Part shown: piece after piece, positions 1 through 26,560 of the stretch | How positions within the stretch are numbered: the first letter of the stretch is position 1 | How the letters are laid out: each line of letters starts with the position of its first letter | From: Ostrea edulis | Taxonomy: Eukaryota | Assembly: GCF_947568905.1 (NCBI RefSeq) | Contig: NC_079165.1 | Location: 3,658,001-3,722,000 of the forward strand | Reading direction: 5' to 3' | Length of the DNA: 64,000 nucleotides | Notes under the pieces: model-generated | Told to the model about the DNA's origin: nothing | The model's input: the letters and a program-made list of their open reading frames with translations, nothing else | Database searches by the model: none | Program-made: the position numbers and the translations under genes

Positions 1-2090
1 ATACCATTACACTATTTGAATAATTTCCTTAAAAAAACATAAGATGATGATTGATATACACAAGACCCTGCTCAAAATTTAAAAAATAAAAAAAATAAAA
101 ATTCCTGGGTCTAGATAAGCAAGGGAATTCTAGTAATAGAACAGGAAACGGATACATAACTCACATGTAAGAAGGGGGGAAGGCATACTGTCATTTAGGG
201 GGAAATTCTATACTGGGATGGCTTTTCCTTGGGGCAAAATTGGGCCCGGGTTAATTCTCCCAAGGGGGAAATTCTATGCCAGGCCCATCTTTCCTGGGAG
301 AATGTCTATCCCGGGCCCGTTTTTCCGGGGGAAAAGTCTATGCGGGGGGGGGGGGGGGGATTGTATGCTACGACACCGGCATATATTTATATATGTCTTA
401 TGCTGGATTTTTTCTCTCCTTTCTATCATGAGTTCATATTTGAATACTATTTTACATTTGTTTTGTGCTGTGATTTTTTTCTATTATGTATTCATGTATT
501 TGGTTACTAATTTTAATTACTAATTTTATGTTTTGTATATGTTTTAATGCAGGACCACAATGAAAACTAACTGTATGCTAATTTGTATCATCATGGATAA
601 ATAAAGGCTATTATTATTATTTATTATTATTATCATGTTGTAACATCGATTTTTTGGGGGTTTGAACCAAGAAGTCATTTATTGATGTAAAAGTGATATA
701 ATTTAATTTTTTTTTTTTTTTTGGGTATTCTGTTTCAGAGTGCTCAAGAAACAAAAGTTTATTTGTCCAACGTTTTGTAATATTACCTTTTCCTAGACAC
801 AATAAAACAAATTGCACTGTTTTATTATACAAAGGACAGAATATTATATACTATAGATATACTATATATACAGAAAGATATATAAAATGTTATACATGTA
901 TTATTTTCGTCAATAATATTTTACTAGAAAGCATTGTAAGAATTTCATGTATTTCAACACATAAACATATAGTACTAGAATGATGTGTATTCTTTTAGTG
1001 GATAAATCTTATAAATATGTTTTCTTCATTTACATCATCATTCACGAATTACCTACCCCCACAGAAAAGTGAACATATATTGTTTAGATTTGCATCCTGA
1101 AATACATTTCACACATACAATGTGGCAAATCTGACTACTGATATTTTTCGGGTTTTTTTTCTCTAGAGTGTGAAACATCGTAATTAGGTTTTTTGTCGTC
1201 ATTTTCAGAATCAAAAAATTATTTTCCTTTTAAATTCACTAAGGGGTGGGATACAGAGTTTATAAGAAATCTTTTTTTTGGTCTATAATATAATATGCCT
1301 TGTACCCCATGCAATTACATCAATACAAATAATACGCCCAACCTACTCTTGTAAACATTTTATCGGTATTGCTATCAATATACTGTTACTCAATTTTACA
1401 GAAAGACAATGTTGTAATAGAGCTCACCTTCATTCTTGTTAACTGGAAGGACAAGAACAGCAGGTTTGACGTCCAAACGAGGACGCTAAAGAGGCAATCG
1501 CGTGTCATCATACATGTTGTCACACAAGTTGAGACAAATCCGAAACATATTGTGGTTTCAAGTTTTCAATCAATATGAATTAAACAAACTCGTTCTATTT
1601 TCTAAAACATCTGAAAAACGCGCAAGATATCTATCTTTGTGGAAGTGCTAATATTGAAAAATACTAGTATTCTTAAATCCACGGAAGAATATGAACAAGT
1701 TACGAAGAATGACAAAACCATGCAGAAACCACGTTTTATGTAAGAGGATGATTGATGAAAATAATACGAATGATTTTTTGAAAATATATATTCTCTAGAT
1801 GCTCAAGTATCACAAAGTATCGTGCTTTGTATGGGCAGGTAACTCTGTACTTTCCAATAGAATACATATTATGCGCTACAGAAAGCAATTGGCAATTTGT
1901 CAATTATCTTTTCGCAAGCAGTACATGATATATTAAAAAAATCATCACAATTTTTATGAACTACACCTGTAGTACTGTAAAGTAAGAAAGATTTTCATTT
2001 ATAGGCTATCTCTTTTTTTTTTCTTTTTTTTTTTTTTTTGACAGGATAAATCGCTTATTCCAATTTTGCATGATTCTTAGCTATTGTTGA

Positions 2091-2290
2091 ATATTATATC
2101 ATCACTACTGTAATGTCACAGCAATATTATATCATCACTACTGTAATGTCACAGCAATATTATATCATCACTACTGTAATGTCACAGCAATATTATATCA
2201 TCACTACTGACTGTAATGTCACAACAATATCTTATCATCACTACAGCAATATCATGACAATATCATATCACCACAATAACATCATATCCA
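2091..2290 (+). repeat. 33-bp minisatellite (ATATTATATCATCACTACTGTAATGTCACAGCA), 3 perfect units plus degenerate units
   Basis: Units start at 2091, 2124 and 2157; a variant unit at 2190 has a 4-bp duplication. Confidence 0.93.
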
Positions 2291-2676
2291 GTGGCGGATT
2301 TAAGGGGGGCGCAGCCGGCGCCCCCCCTTAAATTTTCAAATTTAAGGTAAATCGTGGTATCTTGTTTAGAAAAATGTACCAAACGATAAAAGAAGCAATA
2401 ATTTCTTCCACTCCCGGAGAAATAAATAACAAAATCTTTTGATTTCTTGAAATACTTTATTGGGAGAACTTAATTTTTTCCAAAACCTCTTAAAATTTGC
2501 GTCATTTTTATTAATTTCACCTTATAAAAAATGATAGAAAATATTACAAATGGCTAAATAGGAGACATATTTCAAGCTCTATAAAACCTATAATATCCAG
2601 GGCCTCAAGGCGGTCCCCAGACCCCCTGCCTCTTAAAGTGGCGCCCCCTGTAATCACAATTCCTGGATCCGCCCTG
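2289..2676. mobile_element. MITE with CAGTGGCGGAT...ATCCGCCCTG imperfect TIRs (mirror copy at 15448-15838)
   Basis: Ends CAGTGGCGGATTTA and TGGATCCGCCCTG. Same end motif at 21152-21310 and 22593-22838. It abuts and truncates an MT exon-2 remnant. Confidence 0.75.
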
Positions 2677-2679
2677 TAA

Positions 2680-2862
2680 CTCTTCAGTATTCAGACCTCT
2701 GTCCCTCCACTTAGTTCAGAATATACATGTGAATCCGACTTTAAATGCCAGTGGTCACTCTTTTACAGAACTTACAATCAATTAACTTGTATCACTATGC
2801 TTACAATATGTCTTTACTCCTTTCAACAGATTCTTGCGCACACGGAATAGGATGTACCGGAC
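2680..2862 (+). pseudogene. MT: Metallothionein fragment (copy C'): degenerate exon 2, intron, 5' half of exon 3
   Basis: 2680-2753 aligns to MT exon 2 (CAGTATTCAGACCTCTGTCCCTCCACT vs CAGTGTTCAGGCATCTGTCCCTCCACT). Acceptor TTTCAACAG ends at 2829. 2830-2862 reads (D)SCAHGIGCTG, then a foldback TIR follows. Confidence 0.85.
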
Positions 2863-3005
2863 TATTCTCTTTAGAGAAGTCGAGAGGCATAGCCTTCATC
2901 GACTTCTCTTCGCAAGCATTCATGTTTTGATTCTGGAAAACGTGTAAATGCCGGAATCGGTGACGGTTTATGCTTCGACCGACATTTCGACTCAGATGTG
3001 CCTGG
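2863..3005. mobile_element. Truncated TIR (143 bp) of the foldback element at 14661-15261
   Basis: Starts TATTCTCTTTAGAGAAGTCGAGAGG and ends abruptly at the duplication breakpoint. Confidence 0.92.
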
Positions 3006-14660: not shown

Positions 14661-15261
14661 TATTCTCTTTAGAGAAGTCGGTAGGCATAGCCTTCATCGA
14701 CTTCTCTTCGCAAGCATTCATGTTTTGATTCTGGAAAACGTGTAAATGCCGGAGTCGGTGACGGTTTATGCTTCGACCGACGTTTCGACTAAGATGTGTC
14801 TGGATTTACGCAATAGACAAGTTGTTTTCAAACATTTAACAGCAAAGCACAAAACCGTCACAAGGAAATCAAAACTTACTTGCTTTTAATCCATTTTCAA
14901 CCTGCCCCTGTCCCGGGTTTAAGTCACAACTCTGTTTACGTCAGCCTGCTTTTCTCTTAACTGGTCCCCTATTGTGACAGCTCCCAAGACCAGTTAACGT
15001 AAACCCGGGACAGGGGACATGTTGAAAATGGATTAAAAGCAAGTAAGTGTTGATTTCCTTGTGACAGTTTTGTGCATTATTGCTAAATGTTTGAAAACAA
15101 GTTGTCTATTGCGTAAATCCAGGCACATCTTAGTCGAAATGTCGGTCGAAGCATAAACCGTCACCGATTCCGGCATTTACGCGTTTTCCAGAATCAAAAC
15201 ATGAATGCTTGTGAAGAGAAGTCGATGAAGGCTATGCCTCTCGACTTCTCTAAAGAGAATA
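14661..15261. mobile_element. 601-bp foldback element, ~261-bp TIRs, 9-bp TSD, inserted in MT exon 3
   Basis: TIRs at 14661-14921 and 15000-15261; TSD GTCCGGTAC at 14652-14660 and 15262-15270. Confidence 0.93.
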
Positions 15262-18148
15262 GTCCGGTACATCCTATTCCGTGTGCGCAAGAATCGGTTG
15301 AAAGGAGTAAAGACATATTGTAAGCATAGTGATACAAGTTAATTGATTGTAAGTTCTGTAAAAGAGTGACCACTGGCATTTAAAGTCGGATTCACATGTA
15401 TATTCTGAACTAAGTGGAGGGACAGAGGTCTGAATACTGAAGAGTTACAGGGCGGATCCAGGAATTGTGATTACAGGGGGCGCCACTTTATGAGGCAGGG
15501 GGTCTGGGGACCGCCTTGAGGCCCTGGATATTATAGGTTTTATAGAGCTTGAAATATGTCTCCTATTTAGCCATTTGTAATATTTTCTATCATTTTTTAT
15601 AAGGTGAAATTAATAAAAATGACGCAAATTTTAAGAGGTTTTGGAAAAAATTAAGTTCTCCCAATAAAGTATTTCAAGAAATCAAAAGATTTTGTTATTT
15701 ATTTCTCCGGGAGTGGAAGAAATTATTGCTTCTTTTATCGTTTGGTACATTTTTCTAAACAAGATACCACGATTTACCTTAAATTTGAAAATTTAAAGGG
15801 GGGGGGGGGCGGCTGCGCCCCCCTTAAATCCGCCACTGGATATGATGTTATTGTGGTGATATGATATTGTCATGATATTGCTGTAGTGATGATAAGATAT
15901 TGTTGTGACATTACAGTCAGTAGTGATGATATAATATTGCTGTGACATTACAGTAGTGATGATATAATATTGCTGTGACATTACAGTAGTGATGATATAA
16001 TATTGCTGTGACATTACAGTAGTGATGATATAATATTGCTGTGACATTACAGTAGTGATGATATGATATTCAACAATAGCTAAGAATCATGCAAAATTGG
16101 AATAAGCGATTTATCCTGTCAGAAAAAAAAAAGAAAAAAAGAGATAGCCTATAAATGAAAATCTTTCTTACTTTACAGTACTACAGGTGTAGTTCATAAA
16201 AATTGTGATGATTTTTTTAATATATCATGTACTGCTTGCGAAAAGATAATTGACAAATTGCCAATTGCTTTCTGTAGCGCATAATATGTATTCTATTGGA
16301 AAGTACAGAGTTACCTGCCCATACAAAGCACGATACTTTGTGATACTTGAGCATCTAGAGAATATATATTTTCAAAAAATCATTCGTATTATTTTCATCA
16401 ATCATCCTCTTACATAAAACGTGGTTTCTGCATGGTTTTGTCATTCTTCGTAACTTGTTCATATTCTTCCGTGGATTTAAGAATACTAGTATTTTTCAAT
16501 ATTAGCACTTCCACAAAGATAGATATCTTGCGCGTTTTTCAGATGTTTTAGAAAATAGAACGAGTTTGTTTAATTCATATTGATTGAAAACTTGAAACCA
16601 CAATATGTTTCGGATTTGTCTCAACTTGTGTGACAACATGTATGATGACACGCGATTGCCTCTTTAGCGTCCTCGTTTGGACGTCAAACCTGCTGTTCTT
16701 GTCCTTCCAGTTAACAAGAATGAAGGTGAGCTCTATTACAACATTGTCTTTCTGTAAAATTGAGTAACAGTATATTGATAGCAATACCGATAAAATGTTT
16801 ACAAGAGTAGGTTGGGCGTATTATTTGTATTGATGTAATTGCATGGGGTACAAGGCATATTATATTATAGACCAAAAAAAAAAGATTTCTTATAAACTCT
16901 GTATCCCACCCCTTAGTGAATTTAAAAGGAAAATAATTTTTTGATTCTGAAAATGACGACAAAAAACCTAATTACGATGTTTCACACTCTAGAGAAAAAA
17001 AACCCGAAAAATATCAGTAGTCAGATTTGCCACATTGTATGTGTGAAATGTATTTCAGGATGCAAATCTAAACAATATATGTTCACTTTTCTGTGGGGGT
17101 AGGTAATTCGTGAATGATGATGTAAATGAAGAAAACATATTTATAAGATTTATCCACTAAAAGAATACACATCATTCTAGTACTATATGTTTATGTGTTG
17201 AAATACGTGAAATTCTTACAATGCTTTCTAGTAAAATATTATTGACGAAAATAATACATGTATAACATTTTATATATCTTTCTGTATATATAGTATATCT
17301 ATAGTATATAATATTCTGTCCTTTGTATAATAAAACAGTGCAATTTGTTTTATTGTGTCTAGGAAAAGGTAATATTACAAAACGTTGGACAAATAAACTT
17401 TTATTTCTTGAGCACTCTGAAACAGAATACCAAAAAAAAAAAAAATTAAATTATATCACTTTTACATCAATAAATGACTTCTTGGTTCAAACCCCCCAAA
17501 AATCGATGTTACAACATGATAATAATAATAAATAATAATAATAGCCTTTATTTATCCATGATGATACAAATTAGCATACAGTTAGTTTTCATTGTGGTCC
17601 TGCATTAAAACATATACAAAACAAAAAATTTGTAATTAAAATTAGTAACCAAATACATGAATACATAATAGAAAAAAATCACAGCACAAAACAAATATAA
17701 AATAGTATTCAAATATGAATTCATGATAGAAAGGAGAGAAAAAATCCAGCATAAGACATATATAAATATATGCCGGTGTCGTAGCATACAACCCCCCCCC
17801 CCCCCGCATAGACTTTTCCCCCGGAAAAACGGGCCCGGGATAGACATTCTCCCCGGAAAGATGGGCCTGGCATAGAATTTCCCCCTTGGGAGAATTAACC
17901 CGAGCCCAATTTTGCCCCTAGGAAAAGCCATCCCAGTATAGAATTTCCCCCTAAATGACAGTATGCCTCCCCCCTTCTTACATGTGAGTTATGTATCCGT
18001 TTCCTGTTCTATTACTAGAATTCCCTTGCTTATCTAGACCCAGGAATTTTTATTTTTTTTTATTTTTTAAATTTTGAGCAGGGTCTTGTGTATTTCAATC
18101 ATCATCTTATGTTTTTTTAAGGAAATTATTCAAATAGTGTAATGGTAT
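15119..18148 (-). repeat. Right arm of ~3-kb inverted duplication
   Basis: Reverse complement of 1-3005 with scattered substitutions, homopolymer length changes and one extra 33-bp repeat unit. Confidence 0.96.
15837..16075 (-). repeat. 33-bp minisatellite, right-arm copy with one more unit
   Basis: Reverse complement of 2091-2290; ORF 15793 has four VMSQQYYIITT-type units versus three in ORF 2113. Confidence 0.93.
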
Positions 18149-19159
18149 ATCAAAAATTCATCCAGACATCTTAAGTCTTTGCCGTTATTTACCAGTATCT
18201 AACATTTGAAATAGTGAAGTTGGGAAGAAGTTAATGGGGGTTTTTTTAATTTAGAATTTTGAATTTTATTAAACGGGAAAATTAAATTGCTTAAATCTAT
18301 ACAGTGCATCTATTTTACTTTTCAGATATTTTGTATATCTTTTAGTCGACTTTTTACGAAAAATCCTAATGATAACGACCATCGTTAAAGTCTTTTGAGA
18401 AGCTTATTGTATTTAGTATATGCAATTCAAAGTTTTCAGCGTGTAAACCCAACTTCAACGTCTAAAAAAAAATCGTTTATTTTATGAATATCGTAATCCG
18501 GAAACAGGAGGGGAAAAATTCTATACCAGGGAGGTTTTTTTCCGCCCAGGGGCAAACTCTATACTGACTTTCTACATAGGGGGAACTTATATGATGGGGC
18601 GCTTTTTCTCCCTATGGGAGGAAATCTCCCGGGCCCGTTTTTCCGGGGGAAAATCTATGCAGGGGAAAAGTCTATGTTACAACACCGGTACACACACAGT
18701 GTCACATCGCAACTACTTTCGAGAATTAGGCACATACCCTATCAATTAACTAACATAATGCCTTATAATACATGTATGTGTATAAGATATTGGATTTTAA
18801 TCCATATTCCTTTGATGAAATTTATATCGAAAATAATGAATAAGTTGGTCTATTTTGATTTCCCCAATATCACCCGATCAAATGTAGAATATCTTAGACA
18901 ATGAATCTTAACCCCATTAATAATGGTCATACTGTGTATATTAAAATACATGTATTTTTAGAAACTTCTCTCAGAATACATTATTTCCTGGAAAAAAAAT
19001 ACATTATCATACACATATTCTAAAGATTAATGTAAATGGTAAATAATTTGCTTAAAATAAATGAAACAAAATAATTACCCATGTTTTGTTTATGATCTAA
19101 AAAAAATTCTTCTAAAATTGTTCTATTATATACAGTGAACAGCCAAGGGCTTTGCCAAA

Positions 19160-22100
19160 ATGCAGGAGAAATGCATCATCTTTATTCTTGCTGTTCTGTC
19201 ATGTGTGGCCTTCTATCGATCTGATGGTTTGATCATTTCACCGCGATTGTACTCACCAGGTCGTACGGACTTCGCTTTGGACCACAGATTCTACAACTAC
19301 CTAGGTACAGAAATTTCATTTATTTTAAAGATAAGTTGTTTTTTTTAAAAAATCGAGTGTAAATACATTTGTTACCATGTCAACCAATAAGTCTTATAAC
19401 CGTATCTCTTGAATAGAAGTCCTTTGGGGATCCGGGTTAGAATTAGCTGCAGAAATGTAGCTCTCTGAAAAAATATTGGGACAGATCAGAGAGCTACAGA
19501 TCCATCCCTTATAAAAACCTTAGAGTTACGGCGCATAAAAACATGCGCACGGTTGGGGCCTTAAATCGCTATATTCTTGCATCTTCATTTCATGAATTTT
19601 ATATCAAAAAATTCCTAGTACATTTTTTCTACAATACTTGTGTACCGTTCTGCAGCTAGGTTAGAATAGGTCCTTAATACCCCCTTCTTGTCGTAAGAGG
19701 CGACTTAAGGACGGTCTTTCGGATAAGACCACAAAAACTGAGGTCCAGTGTCACAGCAGGTGTGGTTCAGTAAAGATCCCTCCCTGTTCAAAGACTGCAA
19801 GCGCCGAGCATAGTCCTAGATTTTGCAGCCTTTCACCGACAATGGTGATGACGTCTCCATATGAGTGAAATATTCTCGAGTGGGACGTTAAATAATATAC
19901 GATCAATCAAGCAATCTTGAATAGAATACTGTACTCCGTGTTGTTAAAAATATTGGTAAATATAATGTCAGCGAGATTCGTCAGTCCAAATATCCAGCCT
20001 CGACCAATCTCGCTGAGATTATGGTAAACACAGTCCAAATTTTCTTTCTGTTGCTTTGGAACTGCATGGCTTAATATTCCTTCAAACTCCGAGTCTTTCG
20101 GCCTTCAGATATATATGTACTAGCTTCAGGACGAGAATAAGAAATTCATATGTATACTATTTCACTTTCACGGATAGCATGAAAAGTAAATCAACATGAA
20201 ATATAAGACAGACATTTACTATAATTTATTATTTATGTTAATGACTTCATTTCATTATTTTTGTTTTATGCGAAATAAACATAGAGCAAGCTTTTATCTG
20301 AGAATTTTTTTGAGTGCGCCGTTCCCAAGGAAATTAACTCAACCTTTGAGAGTGTGTGGTTACACATGATACTATACCCATAATCAATCAACTGGGGTCT
20401 AGTTCCAACTGAATCATTCACCGAGTTGTGACAGAAGTAGATAAACGGAAATTATTTTGACATTGAAATTTTGTACAAGCAACAATCAAAATGCACTTAG
20501 ACATAAAAAGAAACAATCATATTTAGGCCCCTAAGATCTTTCCAATGTATGCGCAATGTACGATTTAAGGTAACTCCATACTCGCAGTTTTATCTGATAC
20601 AAGTTTGAAAAATGTATTTATTTCCATTCATTAGAGTTAAAACTAACAAATTATCAAATAAAATACATATGTCATCACACTTTTTAAGATACGAGACGTA
20701 CATAAACAGAATTATATATCACCGTCAGAAAATTGCAATTTTCCTTAAATAGACACTACAGCTCATTTTGCGGAAAAATCATGAAATGACAATTTTCCTA
20801 GCGCTTTCTCAATTCTTGTTGCATTGTTGAAAGTATGAACTTTGCGAAAATAACACTTATCTAAAGTTAAAAATTATCGTTTTAACGTAAAAATTAATAC
20901 TTTTTGATGGCCTATACAAAAAAAATATGGAGTCTCCTCCTTTCAGTCTTCAGACGCATGCGCATATACAGTAAACAGTGCAGCATGTCGTCCAGTGAGA
21001 GAAAGTGTAGTTGATAGATCTAGAATATTGACAGATTCTGTGAGAAAAGAGGTGAAAATAGAATGAGATAAAACTCATACGTGAAATAAAATTTACCTTG
21101 GTATCAGTTTGACCGTTGGAAAACAAAGAGCTCGGAGAAACCCATGTAACTCAGTGGCGGATCTAGGATTTCCGAAGGGGGTGTGAAAGTCAAAGATTAG
21201 CCACAGTAATCGGCCATTCTGGTGCAAAATTTGGATTTTCATTCACAATCTGTGGCGTAAAAAGGGAGGGGGGATCCTGCCCCCCCCTCCCCCCCCTAAA
21301 TCTGCCATTGAGACTAGCTGTGAAGACACTACTTTTAAAAGTAAGTGCTATTTTTATCTGAACACGACATGTGTTAGTTGTAAAAACATCGGTCAATGGG
21401 AACATGGAAGGATTTCTGTTGAAATAATGATTTATTTATAATTACTTATTTTAAGGAGCAGGGAATACTCTTATACTTGAAAGGTGAATGTGGACCCCCT
21501 TGAAGGGAATTTAAATAATTTCCTACACAACACCTTTGCTGTCATTCAAAACCATGTGATGTAAATAAGCATTCAAAAGTCCGAGTCAGAATGAAGAAAC
21601 CTTTGAATTCCGAACGATCTTCAAAGCGCAGTTGAGGGTAAATTGATGCATCCCAATTGTTCAAAATTGTTAGTATCGATATGAATTTTATCATTTTATC
21701 AATACATGTTTTAAAAAACACTTTATTAAAATGTGGAAAATGAGCTGTAGTGTCTCTTTAAACAGCATTATCAAAATTTCATAAAAACTGGTTATGACGA
21801 TATAGTAGCATTCATAACAATTTCATGAAACTGTATCTTCACAAAAATATACAAAATGTCTGTAAAAATAAAGGAAATCTATCGCATAATAGATATGATA
21901 AAGAAATCAATAGAAACAGGGTTATTGCCCTTGGATTCAATATTTTAAAACGTATCATTGATTATTCATCTTTAACTTAGACTTTTAAAATAGTTTATTT
22001 TTAACAAGATTTTTTACAATAACTATCGGAAAAGACTCCAACAAAATTTATGTTCCTATCACACATAAATGTAAATAAAGCATTGATTTTGCAAAATCTG

Positions 22101-23897
22101 ATGACATCACAGGAGGGTGGAATTACTTTAATTATTTCTGTTTAAAAATAATTTGGTCGACGTTATTGGTTAAAATTGGACAAAATAGTTTACACACTAA
22201 AACAAACAAACAAAAAAAGCGTTAGACTTTTATAAATACTACTAAAAAGCTATTTTTAACGAGTGCTCGACTATGAAAAAGCGATAATCGAGTACTTGTT
22301 GACATCCTAGAATTAACCTTATATTTTCACTGAAGAGAAAACATATGCATGTAAACGCCGTCATTATTCTTACCAGAGAGAACTATGGCGAAACTCACGG
22401 AACTGAGAAAAGCTCAACAGCTGCTGGTAAGCGAGCAAGGCGTCAACAGATACAGCATGAAGGGTGGTGCTGATTACGCAGCGACGATCTTTTCCAGCTT
22501 AAAGCCCAGAGGTGTCATATTTGTAAGCAATTATCAATTCTTTGTCGAATACATATAATATTATTAGATAAATGAAGTTCAATATTCCTTATCAGTGGCA
22601 GGTCCATAAATTTCTGAAGAGGGGGGTAAAAGGCTGGGGATCTGGGGGCTGTCTTAAAGCCCTCGGATGGGTCCAGGAAGAAGCCATGGTGGGGATTTAG
22701 GAGGCGAACTTAAAGCTCTTGAGTTCTGACAAAATAAGACTGTATATTTTAAAGTGTTGGACATTTCTATAAGATATCAATCATATTTGTGAAAGGGGGG
22801 GGGGATGGCTCGGCCCGCCGACTCTGGATCCGCAACTGCTTATGACGCCATATGATTAACGGGTATTTTTGAAACTACTGATATTGTCAGTAAATGTCTT
22901 CTTTTACTAGAAACATCCTCTGCGATATACAGATCGAAGATGCAATTGGAGGCGTTGCAGGATAAATTATAGGCGAAGAACATCAAGACGAATGTGGCGG
23001 AAATTAAGGAAAATTAATAGAAAGTCACATGACCGGAAACTAAGAAGACGGAGAAAACAAAGAAAATACGTTCGAAATCGATACAGGAATACAAGATCCA
23101 GATCACGGGGTAGACGAAGGGGATTGAAAAGAAGACAGAGTCGCAGAAGAGGACGGGTTCAGAGAAGAAGGCAGAATTACAGAAGGCGGAAATACAGAAA
23201 ATTCAGGAAAATGTATAGAAAGTCACATGACCGGAAACTAAGAAGACGAAGAGGGAGAAAACAAAGAAAATACGTTCGAGATCGATACAGGAATACAAGA
23301 TCCAGATCACGGGGTAGACGAAGGGGATTGAAAAGAAGACAGAGTCGCAGAAGAGGACGGGTTCAGAGAAGAAGGCAGAATTACAGAAGGCGGAAATACA
23401 GAAAATTCAGGAAAATGTATAGAAAGTCACATGACCGGAAACTAAGAAGACGGAGAGGGAGAAAACAAAGAAAATACGTTCGAGATCGATACAGGGATAC
23501 AAGATCCAGATCGCGGGGTAGACGAAGGGAATTGAAAAGAAGACAGAGTCGCAGAAGAGGACGGGTTCAGAGAAGAAGGCAGAATTACAGAAGGCGGAAA
23601 TACAGAAAATTCAGGAAAATGTATAGAAAGTCACATGACCGGAAACTAAGAAGACGGAGAGGGAGAAAACAAAGAAAATACGTTCGAGATCGATACAGGG
23701 ATACAAGATCCAGATCGCGGGGTAGACGAAGGGAATTGAAAAGAAGACAGAGTCGCAGAAGAGAACGGGTTCAAGGAAGGTGGAATTACGGAAGAAGGCG
23801 GGTTTACAGAAAAGGACGGAGTCAGAGGAGAGGACGGGTTCACAGAAGGCGGTGGGGGTACAAAACAGAAAAAATTGTTTTAATGGTTTTCAAGTAG
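19160..23897 (+). CDS. Predicted secreted arginine-rich repeat protein (~369 aa if 19160-19304 splices to 22933-23897)
   Basis: Exon 1 MQEKCIIFILAVLSCVAFYRSDG... has a signal-peptide-like core and phase-1 donor AG|GTACAG. Acceptor ATACAG|AT at 22933 joins in frame to DRRCNWRRCRINYRRRTSRRMWRK... AATAAA at ~23913. Splicing is inferred. Confidence 0.6.
19420..19915 (+). mobile_element. RTE-head short retroposon with 12-bp TSD, interrupted by a MITE
   Basis: TCTTGAATAGAA flanks both ends; same family body as 14403 and 28660. Confidence 0.85.
19444..19658. mobile_element. 215-bp MITE, 11-bp TIR TAGCTGCAGAA, 9-bp TSD
   Basis: TSD GGTTAGAAT at 19435-19443 and 19659-19667. Confidence 0.92.
20749..21757. 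mobile_element. TTAA-site non-autonomous DNA transposon (Kolobok-like), ~21-bp TIR
   Basis: TTAA|ATAGACACTACAGCTCATTTT ... AAAATGAGCTGTAGTGTCTCT|TTAA. The flanks rejoin as TTCCTTAAACAGC, found uninterrupted as the reverse complement at ~42575-42590. Confidence 0.75.
21152..21310. mobile_element. CAGTGGCGGAT-type MITE nested in the TTAA element
   Basis: CAGTGGCGGATCTAGG...CCTAAATCTGCCATTG. Confidence 0.7.
22593..22838. mobile_element. CAGTGGC-type MITE
   Basis: CAGTGGCAGGTCC...GGATCCGCAACTG with G-rich interior. Confidence 0.6.
22992..23897 (+). CDS. Arg/Lys-rich, protamine-like ORF (301 aa from first ATG) built on 68-aa repeats
   Basis: Only one frame is open across the purine-rich array. 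Each unit has 31 Arg, 8 Lys and 5 Tyr in 68 aa. Confidence 0.7.
   Translation: MWRKLRKINRKSHDRKLRRRRKQRKYVRNRYRNTRSRSRGRRRGLKRRQSRRRGRVQRRRQNYRRRKYRKFRKMYRKSHDRKLRRRRGRKQRKYVRDRYRNTRSRSRGRRRGLKRRQSRRRGRVQRRRQNYRRRKYRKFRKMYRKSHDRKLRRRRGRKQRKYVRDRYRDTRSRSRGRRRELKRRQSRRRGRVQRRRQNYRRRKYRKFRKMYRKSHDRKLRRRRGRKQRKYVRDRYRDTRSRSRGRRRELKRRQSRRRERVQGRWNYGRRRVYRKGRSQRRGRVHRRRWGYKTEKIVLMVFK
23010..23770 (+). repeat. 204-bp coding tandem repeat, ~3.7 units
   Basis: ATGTATAGAAAGTCACATGACC at 23211, 23415 and 23619; a diverged first unit starts at ~23010. Confidence 0.95.
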
Positions 23898-24887
23898 TAC
23901 ATGTAGTTAACAAATAAAAACCAAAGGCATATCGAGAGCAGAATGTTTTTGCTGATTTTGTCGCTTTTATACGAGAATGTAAATTTTGTCTTCGAAAACG
24001 GTCATTCAAGTACAATTACTTTGTTTCGGCCTTGAGTATCCACCTTGTGTTTCTAAATCGTACCAATATTGTATTGTTACGGATTCGTTCACGTGGTTTT
24101 GTTGTCTAAAACAGTAATTCATCGTACAACTCATCTAACTTCGTTTCGACCTTGAATTTTCAAATTATACCATTATTGTATTTTTCCGGATTCTTTCACG
24201 TAATTTTCTCTTCCAAAACAGCAATTCATTCAGATCCATAATTTGTTGACTCGCTTTGGTAAGCTACCCACGTTGGGTATAAAGTATAGAGGTTGCTTAT
24301 TTATTTCTGAATCCTCAGAAGTGCCACTCATGCCAGGATAATTCCAATGATCATGGAAAGTCAATAAACAATCCCACACTGGTGAAGAATACTAGAAACA
24401 TTTTCAGTTGTAGTCTGTCGGGTGAATGAACAGAACAAGGCAATATGATATAAATTTATTCATGTGGTGAACTCTTTGCACTACAACATGCGATGCAAGT
24501 GTAAAATAGTATGTTGATTTTTTAGAAATACAAGTTTTGGTTGTCCAGTGTGGTGGGAGATTTCTAACACTCTTCGCTATTATTACATTAATACATAATA
24601 TACAGAATATATATATATTAGTAATACATTGATTTGAACATATTTTATTGCATAACTATACAAAGGTATTTGTTACAAGTTCTAGCAACTCGGAAAACCT
24701 CTCTCAATCGTTTAATCTTTATGATCAATATAACAGATTGAACTAGAACAGTCAACAATGACCAAGACATGATCTCAAATACGAGTACATGGACAACCAT
24801 CGTGTTCATAAAGCAAAACAAAGTTCATCTGATTTTTTTTAATTAGCCGTCTTGCCTCTTCTTTGAACACTTATTGTTTATTCCAAG

Positions 24888-25127
24888 AATAAGCAGATTT
24901 CACTTGTCTCACAGAATAAACAGCTTTCACTTGTCTCACATAATAAGCAGATTTCACTTGTCTCACAAGCAGATTCCACTTGTCTCACATAATAAGCAGA
25001 TTTCACTTGTCTCACATAATAAGCAGATTTCACTTGTCTCACAGAATAAGCAGATTTCACTTGTCTCGCAGAATAAGGAGTTTTCACTTGTCTCACATAA
25101 TAAGCAGATTTCACTTGTCTCGCAGAA
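24888..25127 (+). repeat. 27-bp minisatellite (AATAAGCAGATTTCACTTGTCTCACAT), ~9 units
   Basis: Visible periodicity; one unit is internally shortened. Confidence 0.93.
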
Positions 25128-25249
25128 TTATTCGCAAATACTCGTCACTGTGGAATGAATACATCTATGCTTCGTTCATGATTGGCATCTGCAGGTTGAG
25201 ATCTGAGTTTAAATTCGATGGTGACGAGTAAGCTACAGCCCCGTCCTTG

Positions 25250-25357
25250 TTCTCGTTCGGTTTTTGCGGTCTCATCGGAAGGACCTCTCCATTTAGTAAC
25301 CTCTTACGACAAGCAAGGGGTACTGAGGACCTATTCTAATCCCGGTCCTCGCGGGAA
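25250..25357 (-). mobile_element. RTE-head short retroposon, 5' part
   Basis: Reverse complement of CCCGCGAGGACCGGGATTAGAATAGGTCCTCAGTACCCCTTGCTTGTCGTAAGAGG. Confidence 0.8.
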
Positions 25358-25854
25358 TCAATTCTTAATTAATTGGAATATAATCATTACTAGAAATAAA
25401 TATGACGAGATCATGGGAATCCCACACAGGGTGAGTTTTCATGGATACTAGGGACTTTACTGGAAATTCCGCCAAACGATTGTCAAATGAGAACTTCTTT
25501 ATATCTTAAGGTTTAGAGGGATATCATACGTGGTTATTTGGGGGTGATCGTTGATAAAATCTCTTGCTGTGGCCTTCATCTCGACATATAGATATATCGA
25601 CGACGGTTTATCTATTTTCACTTTTGAGAAGTGGGAGAGTGTGTAGCTGTTGATTGATTGATACATATGGAGGCGACATCGTGTTTTGTCTTTAGAAGGA
25701 ACGATTAAACATGTAACTGTAATGCAAATGAATTATTTAGGTTTCATGGATTACTATACATGTGAATTAAGTCATTCCAAAATTGAATCTGTCGAGCTTG
25801 ATCATTAAAGTGAATTTCAATAATAATTTTCATTCAAATGTCGATTCGATATAT

Positions 25855-26560
25855 CGGTACGAGATTGATCACTGATCGTTATCTTCACCTTGCATCCCAG
25901 TGAACTCAAAATAAAAGACACCACAGAGTCGTCCACTTCTGCTTCATACTTGGATATTTTATTGAAAATAGATATAAACGGCAAACTAGCAACTCGACTT
26001 TATGACAAACGGGATGATTTCAGTTTCTCCATATTTATGTAGCAATATTACATTATCACCTGCATATAGTCTTTTGACTCTCAACACAAGAGCTTGTTCT
26101 GCGTATGGTCAATTTTTAAATCGAAGCAGGCTACTGACAAACAAGTTGATGGTGCAAAGGTTTCAACAGTTTCGTTTAAAGTAAGCATTTCGCAAATTCT
26201 ATGGTCGTAATAACGATCTAGTTTGCCAATACCACGTTTCATTGGATCCAATGCTGTCTGACGTGTTTCATACCGATTGTTTGGCTGTTCTTGGCACACT
26301 GATTTTGACTACGGATAACTCCGTTTACGTGATCAAAATATAGGGCTCACGGTGGGTGTAACCGGTCGATAGTGGATCTTACTCCTCCTGGGCACCTGAT
26401 CCCACCTCTGGTGTGTCCAGAGGTCCGCGCGTCTTCAATAAAAATGGAAACCGGAAATATTCATATCTTGTGATCAGTCATCCAAAAATGACTTAGTTAA
26501 ACACCACTCTGATTCTTCGCACAAGTACTCTGAAGTTGATATTAAAAAGATCCTCATTGA
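25855..26560 (+). mobile_element. Penelope-like retroelement fragments (RT C-terminus, 3' UTR, plus an upstream RT piece)
   Basis: [44 protein letters not shown]..., family 3' UTR GGCTCACGG(C/T)GGGTGT(G/A)ACCGGTCGA. Confidence 0.85.

What the first reader, a model, noticed from the sequence alone, without database searches (positions are those of the whole stretch)
19160..23897. Candidate undescribed secreted protein with ~57% Arg+Lys, Tyr-containing 68-aa repeats
Seen: a signal-peptide-like exon (19160-19304, phase 1) joins in frame to the acceptor at 22933, giving ~369 aa with one open frame through 204-bp repeats (31 R, 8 K, 5 Y per unit). The degenerate tail also stays open, and AATAAA follows. 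I do not recognise the protein. Known: protamine-like proteins lack signal peptides, and Arg/Tyr(DOPA)-rich secreted proteins occur in mussel adhesives (Mfp-3). Inference: cement or adhesive, shell-matrix, or cationic antimicrobial precursor with many dibasic cleavage sites. The near-identical units suggest recent expansion.
Basis: partly seen in the sequence, partly recalled or inferred. Interest (0 to 1): 0.8.

Follow-up and report, generated by a model that had tools for sequence, protein, structure and literature searches.

The report
Truncated polybasic secreted oyster protein gene
The Arg-rich repeat is real and lies in a spliced gene, but the gene has three exons, not two, and this copy is a young, repeat-expanded duplicate that has lost the tail domain of an uncharacterised secreted oyster protein family.

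Summary
The sequence observation holds. A 204-bp x ~4 array lies at 23001-23813, and only one frame is open (22911-23897). Each 68-aa unit has 31 R, 8 K and 5 Y. A signal-peptide-like exon lies at 19160-19304 and AATAAA at 23913.

The proposed splice (19304 to 22933) is not supported. An RNA contig joins 19304 | 22377-22522 | 22911, so the gene has three exons and encodes 425 aa, not 369. The Saccostrea echinata orthologue (XP_061196377.1, "uncharacterized") has exons of 145/149/567 nt. The flat oyster's ancestral copy has the same 145 and 149 nt first two exons.

The family layout is signal peptide, conserved N-domain, Cys-x4-Cys, a 120-210-aa polybasic R/K/Y tract, then a conserved C-domain. 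The two domains are under purifying selection (dN/dS about 0.1-0.3). No Pfam, PDB or literature match was found.

The flat oyster has five copies. Copy E on C1 is the syntenic, complete orthologue. The window copy is one of four 98-99 % identical duplicates. These four lost the C-domain through a 266-nt deletion, changed four family-invariant residues and expanded the repeat.

Exact 31-mer shares suggest the duplicates are transcribed, but splicing was shown only for an E-like transcript. Function is unknown. My best inference is a secreted polycation that binds polyanions. A decaying duplicate remains a serious rival.

The parts
19160..19304 (+). Exon 1 (coding part): ATG, signal-peptide-like segment, start of conserved N-domain. 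145 nt, phase 1, GT donor at 19305.
   Evidence: Sequence. RNA contig X5 record 8 covers 19152-19304 and splices here. Present in all 5 genomic copies. Same 145-nt exon in Saccostrea.
19305..22376 (+). Intron 1 (3072 nt), inflated by transposon insertions. Repeat 20569-22126 is absent from copies C, D and E. Nested within it is a 1017-bp element with 25-nt terminal inverted repeats (20745-21761), absent from copy B.
   Evidence: Copy comparison, TIRs, joints 20746 to 21761 in RNA and DNA runs.
22377..22522 (+). It is the most conserved part of the N-domain. It is 149 nt in copy E and in Saccostrea, so copies A-D carry an in-frame 3-nt deletion.
   Evidence: RNA contig X5 record 8. Splice sites CAG| and |GTAAG intact in 5 copies. 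Exhaustive protein search hits at the same position in P0001 and P0007. Exon lengths.
22523..22910 (+). Intron 2 (388 nt), GTAAG...TAG.
   Evidence: RNA contig X5 record 8 joins 22522 directly to 22911.
22911..23897 (+). Exon 3 coding part (328 codons plus TAG stop): Cys-x4-Cys motif, polybasic tract, new short C-terminus.
   Evidence: Open frame. Start defined by the RNA contig. Open in all copies.
23007..23813 (+). Tandem array of four units (198, 204, 204, 201 bp) encoding 66-68-aa units with 31 R, 8 K and 5 Y.
   Evidence: TRF, own-genome DNA search, unit alignment, composition.
23871..23872 (+). Breakpoint of a 266-nt deletion (relative to copy E) that removes the conserved C-terminal domain and shifts the frame. 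Shared by copies A-D.
   Evidence: Alignment of tails, blastn breakpoints, C-domain conserved in P0001, P0023, P0007 and copy E.
23913..23918 (+). AATAAA poly(A) signal, 16 nt after the stop.
   Evidence: Sequence. The poly(A) site itself was not tested because the reads were laid only up to 23204.
15119..24590 (.). Segmentally duplicated unit carrying the gene. Its inverted partner (copy B) starts just left of the window, and that partner's upstream arm is window 175-3005.
   Evidence: Inverted repeats, blastn of copies B-E against the window.

Best explanation
Window 19160-23897 is a three-exon gene (exons 19160-19304, 22377-22522, 22911-23897; 425 codons). It is one of four very young duplicates (A-D, on C2 and C7) of a conserved, oyster-restricted gene whose complete copy (E) lies on C1.

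The ancestral protein has this layout: a cleavable signal peptide; an N-domain of about 85 aa; a Cys-x4-Cys motif; a 120-210-aa intrinsically disordered polybasic tract (R+K 45-60 %, Tyr 6-8 %, almost no acidic residues); and a C-domain of about 60 aa.

In the flat-oyster lineage part of the basic tract became a 204-bp tandem repeat. In the A-D lineage the repeat expanded to 3-5 units, a 266-nt deletion removed the C-domain, and four family-invariant N-domain residues were replaced.

Shown: gene structure, family membership, synteny of copy E, purifying selection on the N- and C-domains between genera, and splicing of an E-like mRNA.

Inferred: the window copy is still translated into a secreted protein with net charge about +167. 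The tract works as a polycation that binds polyanions outside the cell (sulphated or phosphorylated matrix, nucleic acids, microbial surfaces) through charge and Arg/Tyr cation-pi contacts. Its tissue and biological role are unknown.
For: Splicing: X5 contig record 8 joins 19304 | 22379-22522 | 22911. The 5 unplaced letters match copy E's 149-nt exon 2.

Frame: 145+146 nt keeps the Arg frame, and all five copies are open (357-491 aa) with intact splice sites.

Homologues: exon 2 hits P0001 (E 2.8e-7, 62 % identity, residues 51-97) and P0007 (53 %). P0001 is XP_061196377.1 of Saccostrea echinata. P0001 has exons of 145/149/567 nt, matching copy E's first two exons of 145 and 149 nt.

Synteny: RNase P p29 lies upstream of both copy E and the Saccostrea gene.

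Selection: N-domain dN/dS 0.09-0.28 and C-domain 0.25-0.28, with saturated dS.

Basic-tract composition is conserved without alignable sequence.

A-D-derived changes: W30L, L64Q, D80G, F89S, a 1-codon deletion and the 266-nt deletion.

Transcription of the A-D type: RNA runs X1-X4 hold 0.47-0.55 of exact 31-mers, whereas copy E alone could give at most 0.36 and none from the tail or 3'UTR. In X1 exon 3 has contig depth in the thousands, while the non-repeat parts of the introns read 0.

Signal peptide: a hydrophobic core at residues 5-19, conserved as a property in divergent orthologues.
Against: - No read evidence ties exons 1-2 of an A-D-type copy to the array. The only spliced contig is E-like.
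- The RNA runs X1-X4 show no coverage of exons 1-2. These may be 3'-biased libraries, and the tool warns that holes prove nothing.
- Substitutions within the array look neutral: 18 nonsynonymous, 5 synonymous, 0 stops against 1.4 stops expected.
- Introns are as conserved as exons among the copies, so there is no evidence of selection on copies A-D.
- Loss of a conserved domain and of invariant residues is what a decaying duplicate looks like.
- No signal-peptide predictor, protein data or tissue data were available.
- The AlphaFold model is poor (pLDDT 51).
Confidence: 0.62

Rival explanations
1. Same gene identity, but the window copy (and B-D) is a functionless, still-transcribed relic. It would be a young segmental duplicate on its way to becoming a pseudogene, with its open frame surviving only because it is so recent.
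For: The copy lost the conserved C-domain through an out-of-frame 266-nt deletion. It replaced 4 residues that are invariant in all other family members and lost one codon, against 1 conservative change on the E branch. Array substitutions are indistinguishable from neutral. Introns are as conserved as exons. Expected stops among the observed substitutions are only about 1.4, so an intact frame is not surprising.
Against: All four copies keep the 357-491-codon frame and all splice sites, despite repeat-number changes and several indels that are all multiples of 3. A-D-type sequence appears abundant in four RNA runs. Four copies were retained on two chromosomes.
Confidence: 0.3
2. One reading: a two-exon gene in which 19304 splices directly to 22933, giving a 369-aa secreted protein.
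For: GT at 19305 and an AG before 22933 are in frame. That join is open in all five copies.
Against: The spliced RNA contig uses exon 22377-22522 and the acceptor at 22911. The Saccostrea annotation and copy E have the same three exons. Exon 2 encodes the best-conserved part of the protein. A minor isoform cannot be excluded because not all joints were listed.
Confidence: 0.03
3. The array is non-coding: a purine-rich minisatellite in a 3' UTR or in a non-coding RNA.
For: Near-neutral substitution pattern in the array. 4.3 % of shuffled units are open by chance.
Against: The ORF runs from the first ATG through three exons to 16 nt before AATAAA, with no earlier stop. Orthologues encode a basic tract of the same composition between two conserved domains in the same frame.
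Confidence: 0.02
4. The protein is an intracellular nucleic-acid binder, such as a protamine-like sperm chromatin protein or a nucleolar protein, and the hydrophobic N-terminus is not a secretion signal.
For: The Arg/Ser/Tyr-rich composition resembles protamines and RS domains (my own knowledge). One orthologue was automatically named after an RS-rich nuclear protein.
Against: An N-terminal hydrophobic core of 14-15 residues after a charged N-terminus is conserved as a property in orthologues with different sequence. No protamine or LUC7 Pfam domain matches. The size and flanking folded domains are unlike protamines.
Confidence: 0.06
5. The protein is a polyprotein precursor. Furin-type convertases would cut at R-X-[KR]-R (about 2 sites per unit) and release Arg-rich peptides of about 27 and 41 aa that act as antimicrobial or cell-penetrating peptides. 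Repeat expansion would raise the dose.
For: The window model has 8 R-X-[KR]-R sites, about two per unit, and passes through the secretory pathway. Repeat number varies between copies.
Against: The orthologues' tracts are not repetitive and show no conserved peptide units. If all 87 dibasic pairs were cut, nothing longer than 4 residues would remain. There is no peptide evidence.
Confidence: 0.08

Closest known systems
XP_061196377.1, uncharacterized protein LOC133204640 (Saccostrea echinata). Also its S. cucullata relative, mis-named 'luc7-like protein 3', and unnamed ~1-kb transcripts encoding P0007.
   Same: True homologues. They share the signal peptide, N-domain (62 % identity over exon 2), Cys-x4-Cys, polybasic R/K/Y tract and three exons. 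The flat oyster's copy E has the same first two exon lengths (145 and 149 nt) and shares synteny and the C-terminal domain.
   Different: Their basic tract is 120-140 aa and not repetitive. The window copy has 318 aa with a 204-bp tandem repeat, lacks the C-domain and has lost four invariant residues. None has a known function.
Protamines and protamine-like sperm nuclear basic proteins (e.g. cephalopod Arg/Ser/Tyr protamines). Comparison from my own knowledge.
   Same: Extreme Arg content with Ser and Tyr, and expected tight binding to polyanions such as DNA.
   Different: Protamines are small, nuclear and lack an ER signal peptide or flanking folded domains. No Pfam protamine family matches.
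Polybasic cement or adhesive proteins that work by complex coacervation or cation-pi contacts (mussel Mfp-3, sandcastle-worm Pc proteins). Comparison from my own knowledge.
   Same: Secreted, strongly cationic, Tyr-containing, low-complexity, lineage-restricted and rapidly evolving.
   Different: Those proteins are small and rich in Gly and Tyr/DOPA (Tyr around 20 %). Here Tyr is 7 % and Arg 43 %. There is no sequence relationship, and gland expression was not tested.
Basic, repetitive low-complexity shell-matrix proteins of bivalves (KRMP, shematrin-type). Comparison from my own knowledge; only the search listing was consulted and no paper was read.
   Same: Signal peptide plus a basic low-complexity region. 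The gene family evolves by repeat expansion and duplication.
   Different: No Gly/Tyr-rich domain and no sequence similarity. No shell-proteome evidence was found.

Membership tests
Oyster 'LOC133204640-type' family (unnamed; defined here from P0001, P0023, P0007 and copy E) | N-domain sequence homology (motifs around YSPGRTDF and IFFSLKP) | tested here: met
   Exon 2 of the window versus P0001: E 2.8e-7, 62 % identity. P0007: 53 %. Alignment.
Oyster 'LOC133204640-type' family | Three exons with phases 1/0 and lengths 145 / 149 / remainder | tested here: met
   Window exons are 145 / 146 / 987 nt. The 146 reflects an in-frame 3-nt deletion. Saccostrea has 145/149/567.
Oyster 'LOC133204640-type' family | N-terminal signal peptide | tested here: inconclusive
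   A hydrophobic core at residues 5-19 with small residues at -3/-1 is present in all members. No dedicated predictor was available and there is no experiment.
Oyster 'LOC133204640-type' family | Cys-x4-Cys followed by a polybasic tract with almost no acidic residues | tested here: met
   CNWRRC, then 318 aa with R 43 %, K 11 % and D+E 4 %. Orthologues have R+K 45-60 %.
Oyster 'LOC133204640-type' family | Conserved C-terminal domain (GRVGVY ... IKR ... W ... F) | tested here: not met
   Deleted in the window copy and in copies B-D (266-nt deletion). Present in copy E and all orthologues. The window gene is therefore a truncated derivative, not a complete member.
Oyster 'LOC133204640-type' family | Syntenic position next to RNase P p29 | tested here: not met
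   Only copy E on C1 is syntenic. The window copy lies on C2 in a segmental duplication.
Protamine / protamine-like SNBP | Small nuclear protein without a signal peptide; match to a protamine family model | tested here: not met
   No Pfam hit at E <= 1. The model is 425 aa and has a signal-peptide-like N-terminus.
Protamine / protamine-like SNBP | Testis-specific expression and sperm chromatin association | not testable with these tools
   Run metadata are coded.
Mfp-3-like DOPA adhesive protein | Small (5-7 kDa), Tyr about 20 %, Gly/Asn-rich | tested here: not met
   The model is 55 kDa with Tyr 7 % and Gly 5 %.
Dibasic-processed peptide precursor (neuropeptide or AMP type) | Defined peptides of at least 5-10 residues between basic cleavage sites | tested here: not met
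   The longest non-basic stretch in the array is 4 residues.
LUC7-like protein 3 (name attached to P0023) | LUC7 N-terminal zinc-finger domain | tested here: not met
   No Pfam family matches P0023 or any other member. The name is an artefact of low-complexity similarity.

The most novel reading that the evidence does not exclude
The four truncated copies are not decaying. On this reading they are a newly evolved flat-oyster gene: domain loss plus tandem-repeat expansion and amplification to four loci turned a conserved secreted two-domain protein into an abundantly expressed, free, hyper-cationic (+130 to +200) Arg/Tyr polymer. It might be cut by furin into Arg-rich peptides. It would have a new extracellular role, for example as the coacervating partner of acidic matrix or cement components, or as a protamine-like antimicrobial.
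Probability: 0.2. Interest if true: 0.7.

Novelty: new variant of a known kind. Interest (0 to 1): 0.45.

Why it matters
The finding defines a previously undescribed, oyster-restricted family of secreted proteins in which two conserved domains flank a protamine-like polybasic tract. No function, Pfam family or structure is known for it.

It also catches that family in the act of remodelling in the flat oyster: repeat birth, domain loss and four-fold segmental duplication within a few per cent of sequence divergence. If the truncated copies are functional, they would be a clean natural example of a new secreted polycation arising from an older gene. They would then be a candidate for cement, matrix or immune biology in a species of restoration interest.

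If they are not functional, the locus is still a useful warning for annotation: it is a long open frame, transcribed, and yet probably a relic.

Tried and rejected
- Pfam on each exon and on complete family members: no hit.
- Word-index protein searches with exon 3 and with its head plus first unit: nothing.
- ESM Atlas look-alike searches on exon 3 and on P0007: no usable hit.
- PDB sequence profile: nothing.
- AlphaFold2 of P0001 with a 7-sequence alignment: mean pLDDT 51.
- Fold searches: best Z 5.7, mostly on nucleotidyltransferase-like alpha/beta folds, and TM <= 0.27. These are below the tool's stated noise level and the family lacks the transferase motif, so I rejected them as a fold assignment.
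- Literature searches by species plus 'arginine-rich', LOC id, 'luc7-like protein 3' plus oyster, shell-matrix terms and run accessions: nothing relevant.
- Rfam on 15000-26000: nothing.
- Stop-avoidance and dN/dS tests within the array: underpowered and neutral-looking.
- Paralogue conservation as a coding test: rejected, because introns are equally conserved.
- Exons were searched one by one by reference. Joined models were built only inside scripts, from the stored files, for local statistics. SignalP-type prediction and folding of the joined window model were therefore left out.
The 3' end, the poly(A) site and the deletion junction were therefore not examined.


Full report
**1. The observation**

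The window comes from the European flat oyster, according to earlier notes of this scan. It is G000:C2:3658001-3722000.

- Tandem Repeats Finder reports a 204-bp unit repeated 3.9 times at 23001-23794, with 96 % matches.
- Of the six frames, only one is open through the array. It runs from 22911 to the TAG at 23895-23897, 328 codons.
- The stretch 19160-19304 starts with ATG and encodes a short charged N-terminus followed by a 14-15-residue hydrophobic core. It is 145 nt long and is followed by GT.
- AATAAA lies at 23913.
- Only 4.3 % of shuffled units have any open frame.

The raw observation is therefore correct.

**2. The gene model is different**

I had one reads call.

In run X5 a 501-nt contig (record 8) lies on 19152-19304, then 22379-22522, then 22911-23088. 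The gene therefore has a middle exon, 22377-22522, with acceptor ...TTACCAG| and donor |GTAAGC. The last exon begins at 22911 after ...TTTTACTAG|, not at 22933.

Exons 1 and 2 together are 145 + 146 = 291 nt, so exon 3 is read from its first base in the Arg-rich frame. The model is 425 codons. Skipping exon 2 would run into a stop after 20 codons of exon 3.

The five letters of the contig that fit neither side of the first junction are explained by copy E, whose exon 2 is 3 nt longer.

Run X9 behaves like genomic DNA: it has an unspliced contig covering 22127-23046.

The runs recorded as RNA-Seq (X1-X4) cover the array with contig depths in the thousands but show nothing on exons 1-2 or on the non-repeat parts of the introns. 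This is compatible with 3'-biased libraries, and the tool warns that holes prove nothing.

**3. Five copies in the genome**

Exon 1, exon 2, the head of exon 3 and the array each hit the same five places and nothing else at protein level:

| Copy | Location |
|---|---|
| A | the window |
| B | inverted, just left of the window on C2 |
| C and D | an inverted pair on C7 |
| E | C1 |

All five keep the ATG, both introns' splice sites and an open frame of 357-491 codons, with 2 to 5 repeat units.

Copies A-D are 98-99.6 % identical to one another in upstream sequence, introns and exons alike. Copy E is 92-96 % identical to them. These are recent segmental duplications, so paralogue conservation says nothing about coding.

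The duplicated unit spans about window 15119-24590. Window 175-3005 is the inverted arm that belongs to copy B.

**4. Relatives elsewhere**

Pfam and two word-index searches gave nothing. The protein was still unexplained, so I spent the exhaustive search on the unique exon 2.

Three of its seven hits match at the same position as in my model:

- P0001: 286 aa, 62 % identity, residues 51-97
- P0007: 303 aa, 53 % identity
- P0003: a 110-aa open frame called across exon 2 on genomic contigs

P0001 is XP_061196377.1, 'uncharacterized protein LOC133204640' of Saccostrea echinata. A 75 %-identical S. cucullata protein carries the automatic name 'luc7-like protein 3'. P0007 is encoded by full-length ~1-kb transcript contigs of an unidentified species.

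The alignment shows a common layout:

- signal peptide
- N-domain of about 85 aa
- Cys-x4-Cys
- 120-140-aa tract with R+K 45-60 %, Tyr 6-8 % and virtually no Asp or Glu
- conserved C-domain of about 60 aa

The Saccostrea gene has three exons of 145, 149 and 567 nt. Copy E's first two exons are the same lengths, 145 and 149 nt.

The RNase P p29 gene lies upstream of the Saccostrea gene in the same orientation. In the flat oyster it lies about 25 kb upstream of copy E. Copy E is therefore the orthologue.

Between genera, synonymous sites are saturated (pS 0.6-0.9) while dN/dS is 0.09-0.28 for the N-domain and about 0.25-0.28 for the C-domain. The family is thus a genuine protein-coding family under purifying selection on its two end domains. 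The basic tract conserves composition but not sequence, as is usual for a functional disordered region.

**5. What the window copy is**

Only copy E has the C-domain. Copies A-D share a 266-nt deletion whose breakpoint lies between window 23871 and 23872. It removes the C-domain and shifts the frame, so the protein ends after ten new residues.

I polarised the A-versus-E differences in the N-terminal region with the three outgroups:

- Five replacements arose on the A-D branch. Four of them (W30L, L64Q, D80G, F89S) are at positions invariant in every other family member. There is also a one-codon deletion.
- One conservative change, in the signal peptide, arose on the E branch.

A-versus-E dN/dS in the N-domain is about 0.5.

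Within the array, the 23 distinct substitutions among units are 18 nonsynonymous, 5 synonymous and 0 stops. The expectation is 67 %, 27 % and 6 % respectively, so this is indistinguishable from neutrality and underpowered for stop avoidance. All indels seen in coding sequence are multiples of three: 3, 6, 15 and n x 204 nt.

The 204-bp repeat exists in copy E (about 2 units) but not in the orthologues. It was therefore born in the Ostrea lineage and expanded further in A-D.

**6. Is the window-type copy expressed?**

The exact 31-mers of 22933-23960 are shared as follows:

| Copy | Share of 31-mers |
|---|---|
| B | 91 % |
| C and D | 62-69 % |
| E | 36 %, none from the tail or 3'UTR |

RNA runs X1-X4 hold 0.47-0.55 of the sampled words. 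That is close to the 0.62 of the DNA-like runs and above what copy E alone could give. X5 and X6 hold 0.23-0.24, which is compatible with E-type sequence only.

This suggests A-D-type transcripts exist and are abundant in one study. It is indirect, however. It does not separate copy A from B-D, and it does not show that these transcripts are spliced like the E-like one. X1 also contains a contig with the E-type unit-to-tail join (loose end at 23185).

**7. How it probably works**

Shown: the architecture, and the conservation of a signal-peptide-like N-terminus as a property across divergent sequences.

Inferred: the protein enters the secretory pathway and the signal is removed, probably after residue 17-21. 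The 318-residue tract (R 43 %, K 11 %, Y 7 %; whole-protein net charge about +167, pI about 12) is disordered and acts as a polycation, binding extracellular polyanions.

About two R-X-[KR]-R sites per unit would allow furin-type cutting into Arg-rich peptides of about 27 and 41 aa. That is speculation.

In the low-confidence AlphaFold model of P0001 (pLDDT 51), the better-predicted strands of the N-part (residues 72-99) and the C-part (227-273) are aligned together to small alpha/beta folds by the structure search. The scores (Z <= 5.7) are below the tool's own noise level. I draw no fold conclusion from this. I note only that if the two ends form one module, copies A-D have half of it.

**8. 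Comparison with the known, and novelty**

The only true relatives are uncharacterised or mis-named database entries. No Pfam family, solved structure or paper was found.

- Protamines share the composition but not the secretion signal, the size or the flanking domains.
- Mfp-3-type adhesives share charge and Tyr, but are small and far richer in Tyr.
- Peptide-precursor logic fails, because nothing longer than 4 residues lies between basic residues in the array.

I class the finding as a new variant of a known kind: a lineage-restricted secreted low-complexity protein.

**9. Verdict**

The array, frame, composition and exon 1 are right; the splice and the protein length are wrong.
'Secreted and undescribed' holds, as does recent expansion. 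The specific functional guesses are untested or disfavoured.
- The main addition is that this locus is a truncated, repeat-expanded duplicate of a conserved gene whose intact copy lies on another chromosome.
- Whether the truncated copies are a new gene or a relic is open. I put it at roughly 60:30 in favour of a protein still being made, with function unproven.

Noticed in passing
window 20745-21761: A 1017-bp element with 25-nt terminal inverted repeats sits in intron 1 of the window copy only; it is absent from copy B. RNA and DNA runs contain the 'empty' joined form 20746 to 21761, from other loci of the surrounding repeat. It looks like a very recent non-autonomous DNA-transposon insertion nested in an older repeat.
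   Followed up: partly
window 20569-22126 and 19304-20058: Intron 1 carries high-copy repeats, with summed contig depth of 20,000-220,000 in the DNA-like run X9. The 20569-22126 block is present in copies A and B but absent from C, D and E, so it dates the split between the C2 and C7 pairs.
   Followed up: partly
window 175-3005 versus 15119-17974: These are the arms of a large inverted segmental duplication, 98-100 % complementary. Each arm continues into one copy of the polybasic gene (copy B lies just left of the window). The same head-to-head pair exists on C7, so an inverted pair was itself duplicated between chromosomes.
   Followed up: partly
window 24886-25128: A 27-bp tandem repeat of about 9 copies (87 % matches) lies about 300 bp beyond the end of the duplicated unit.
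   Followed up: no
P0023 (Saccostrea cucullata protein): The public name 'luc7-like protein 3' is a mis-annotation. The protein has no LUC7 or any other Pfam domain and is a 75 %-identical member of the family described here.
   Followed up: yes
L041-L046 (P0003 and P0016 cluster): 110-aa 'proteins' in the public collection are open frames called across exon 2 and into both introns on genomic contigs of another oyster-like species. They are gene-calling artefacts, but they show that the family exists in at least one further species.
   Followed up: partly
run X5, contig record 8 (laid on window 19152-23088): The spliced transcript is E-like: it has the 149-nt exon 2 and shares 5 of 13 listed differences with copy E. 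It is identical to none of the five genomic copies, and 21 letters at its 5' end fit nothing upstream of 19152. It is either a divergent allele or a closely related species (coded 'organism A').
   Followed up: partly
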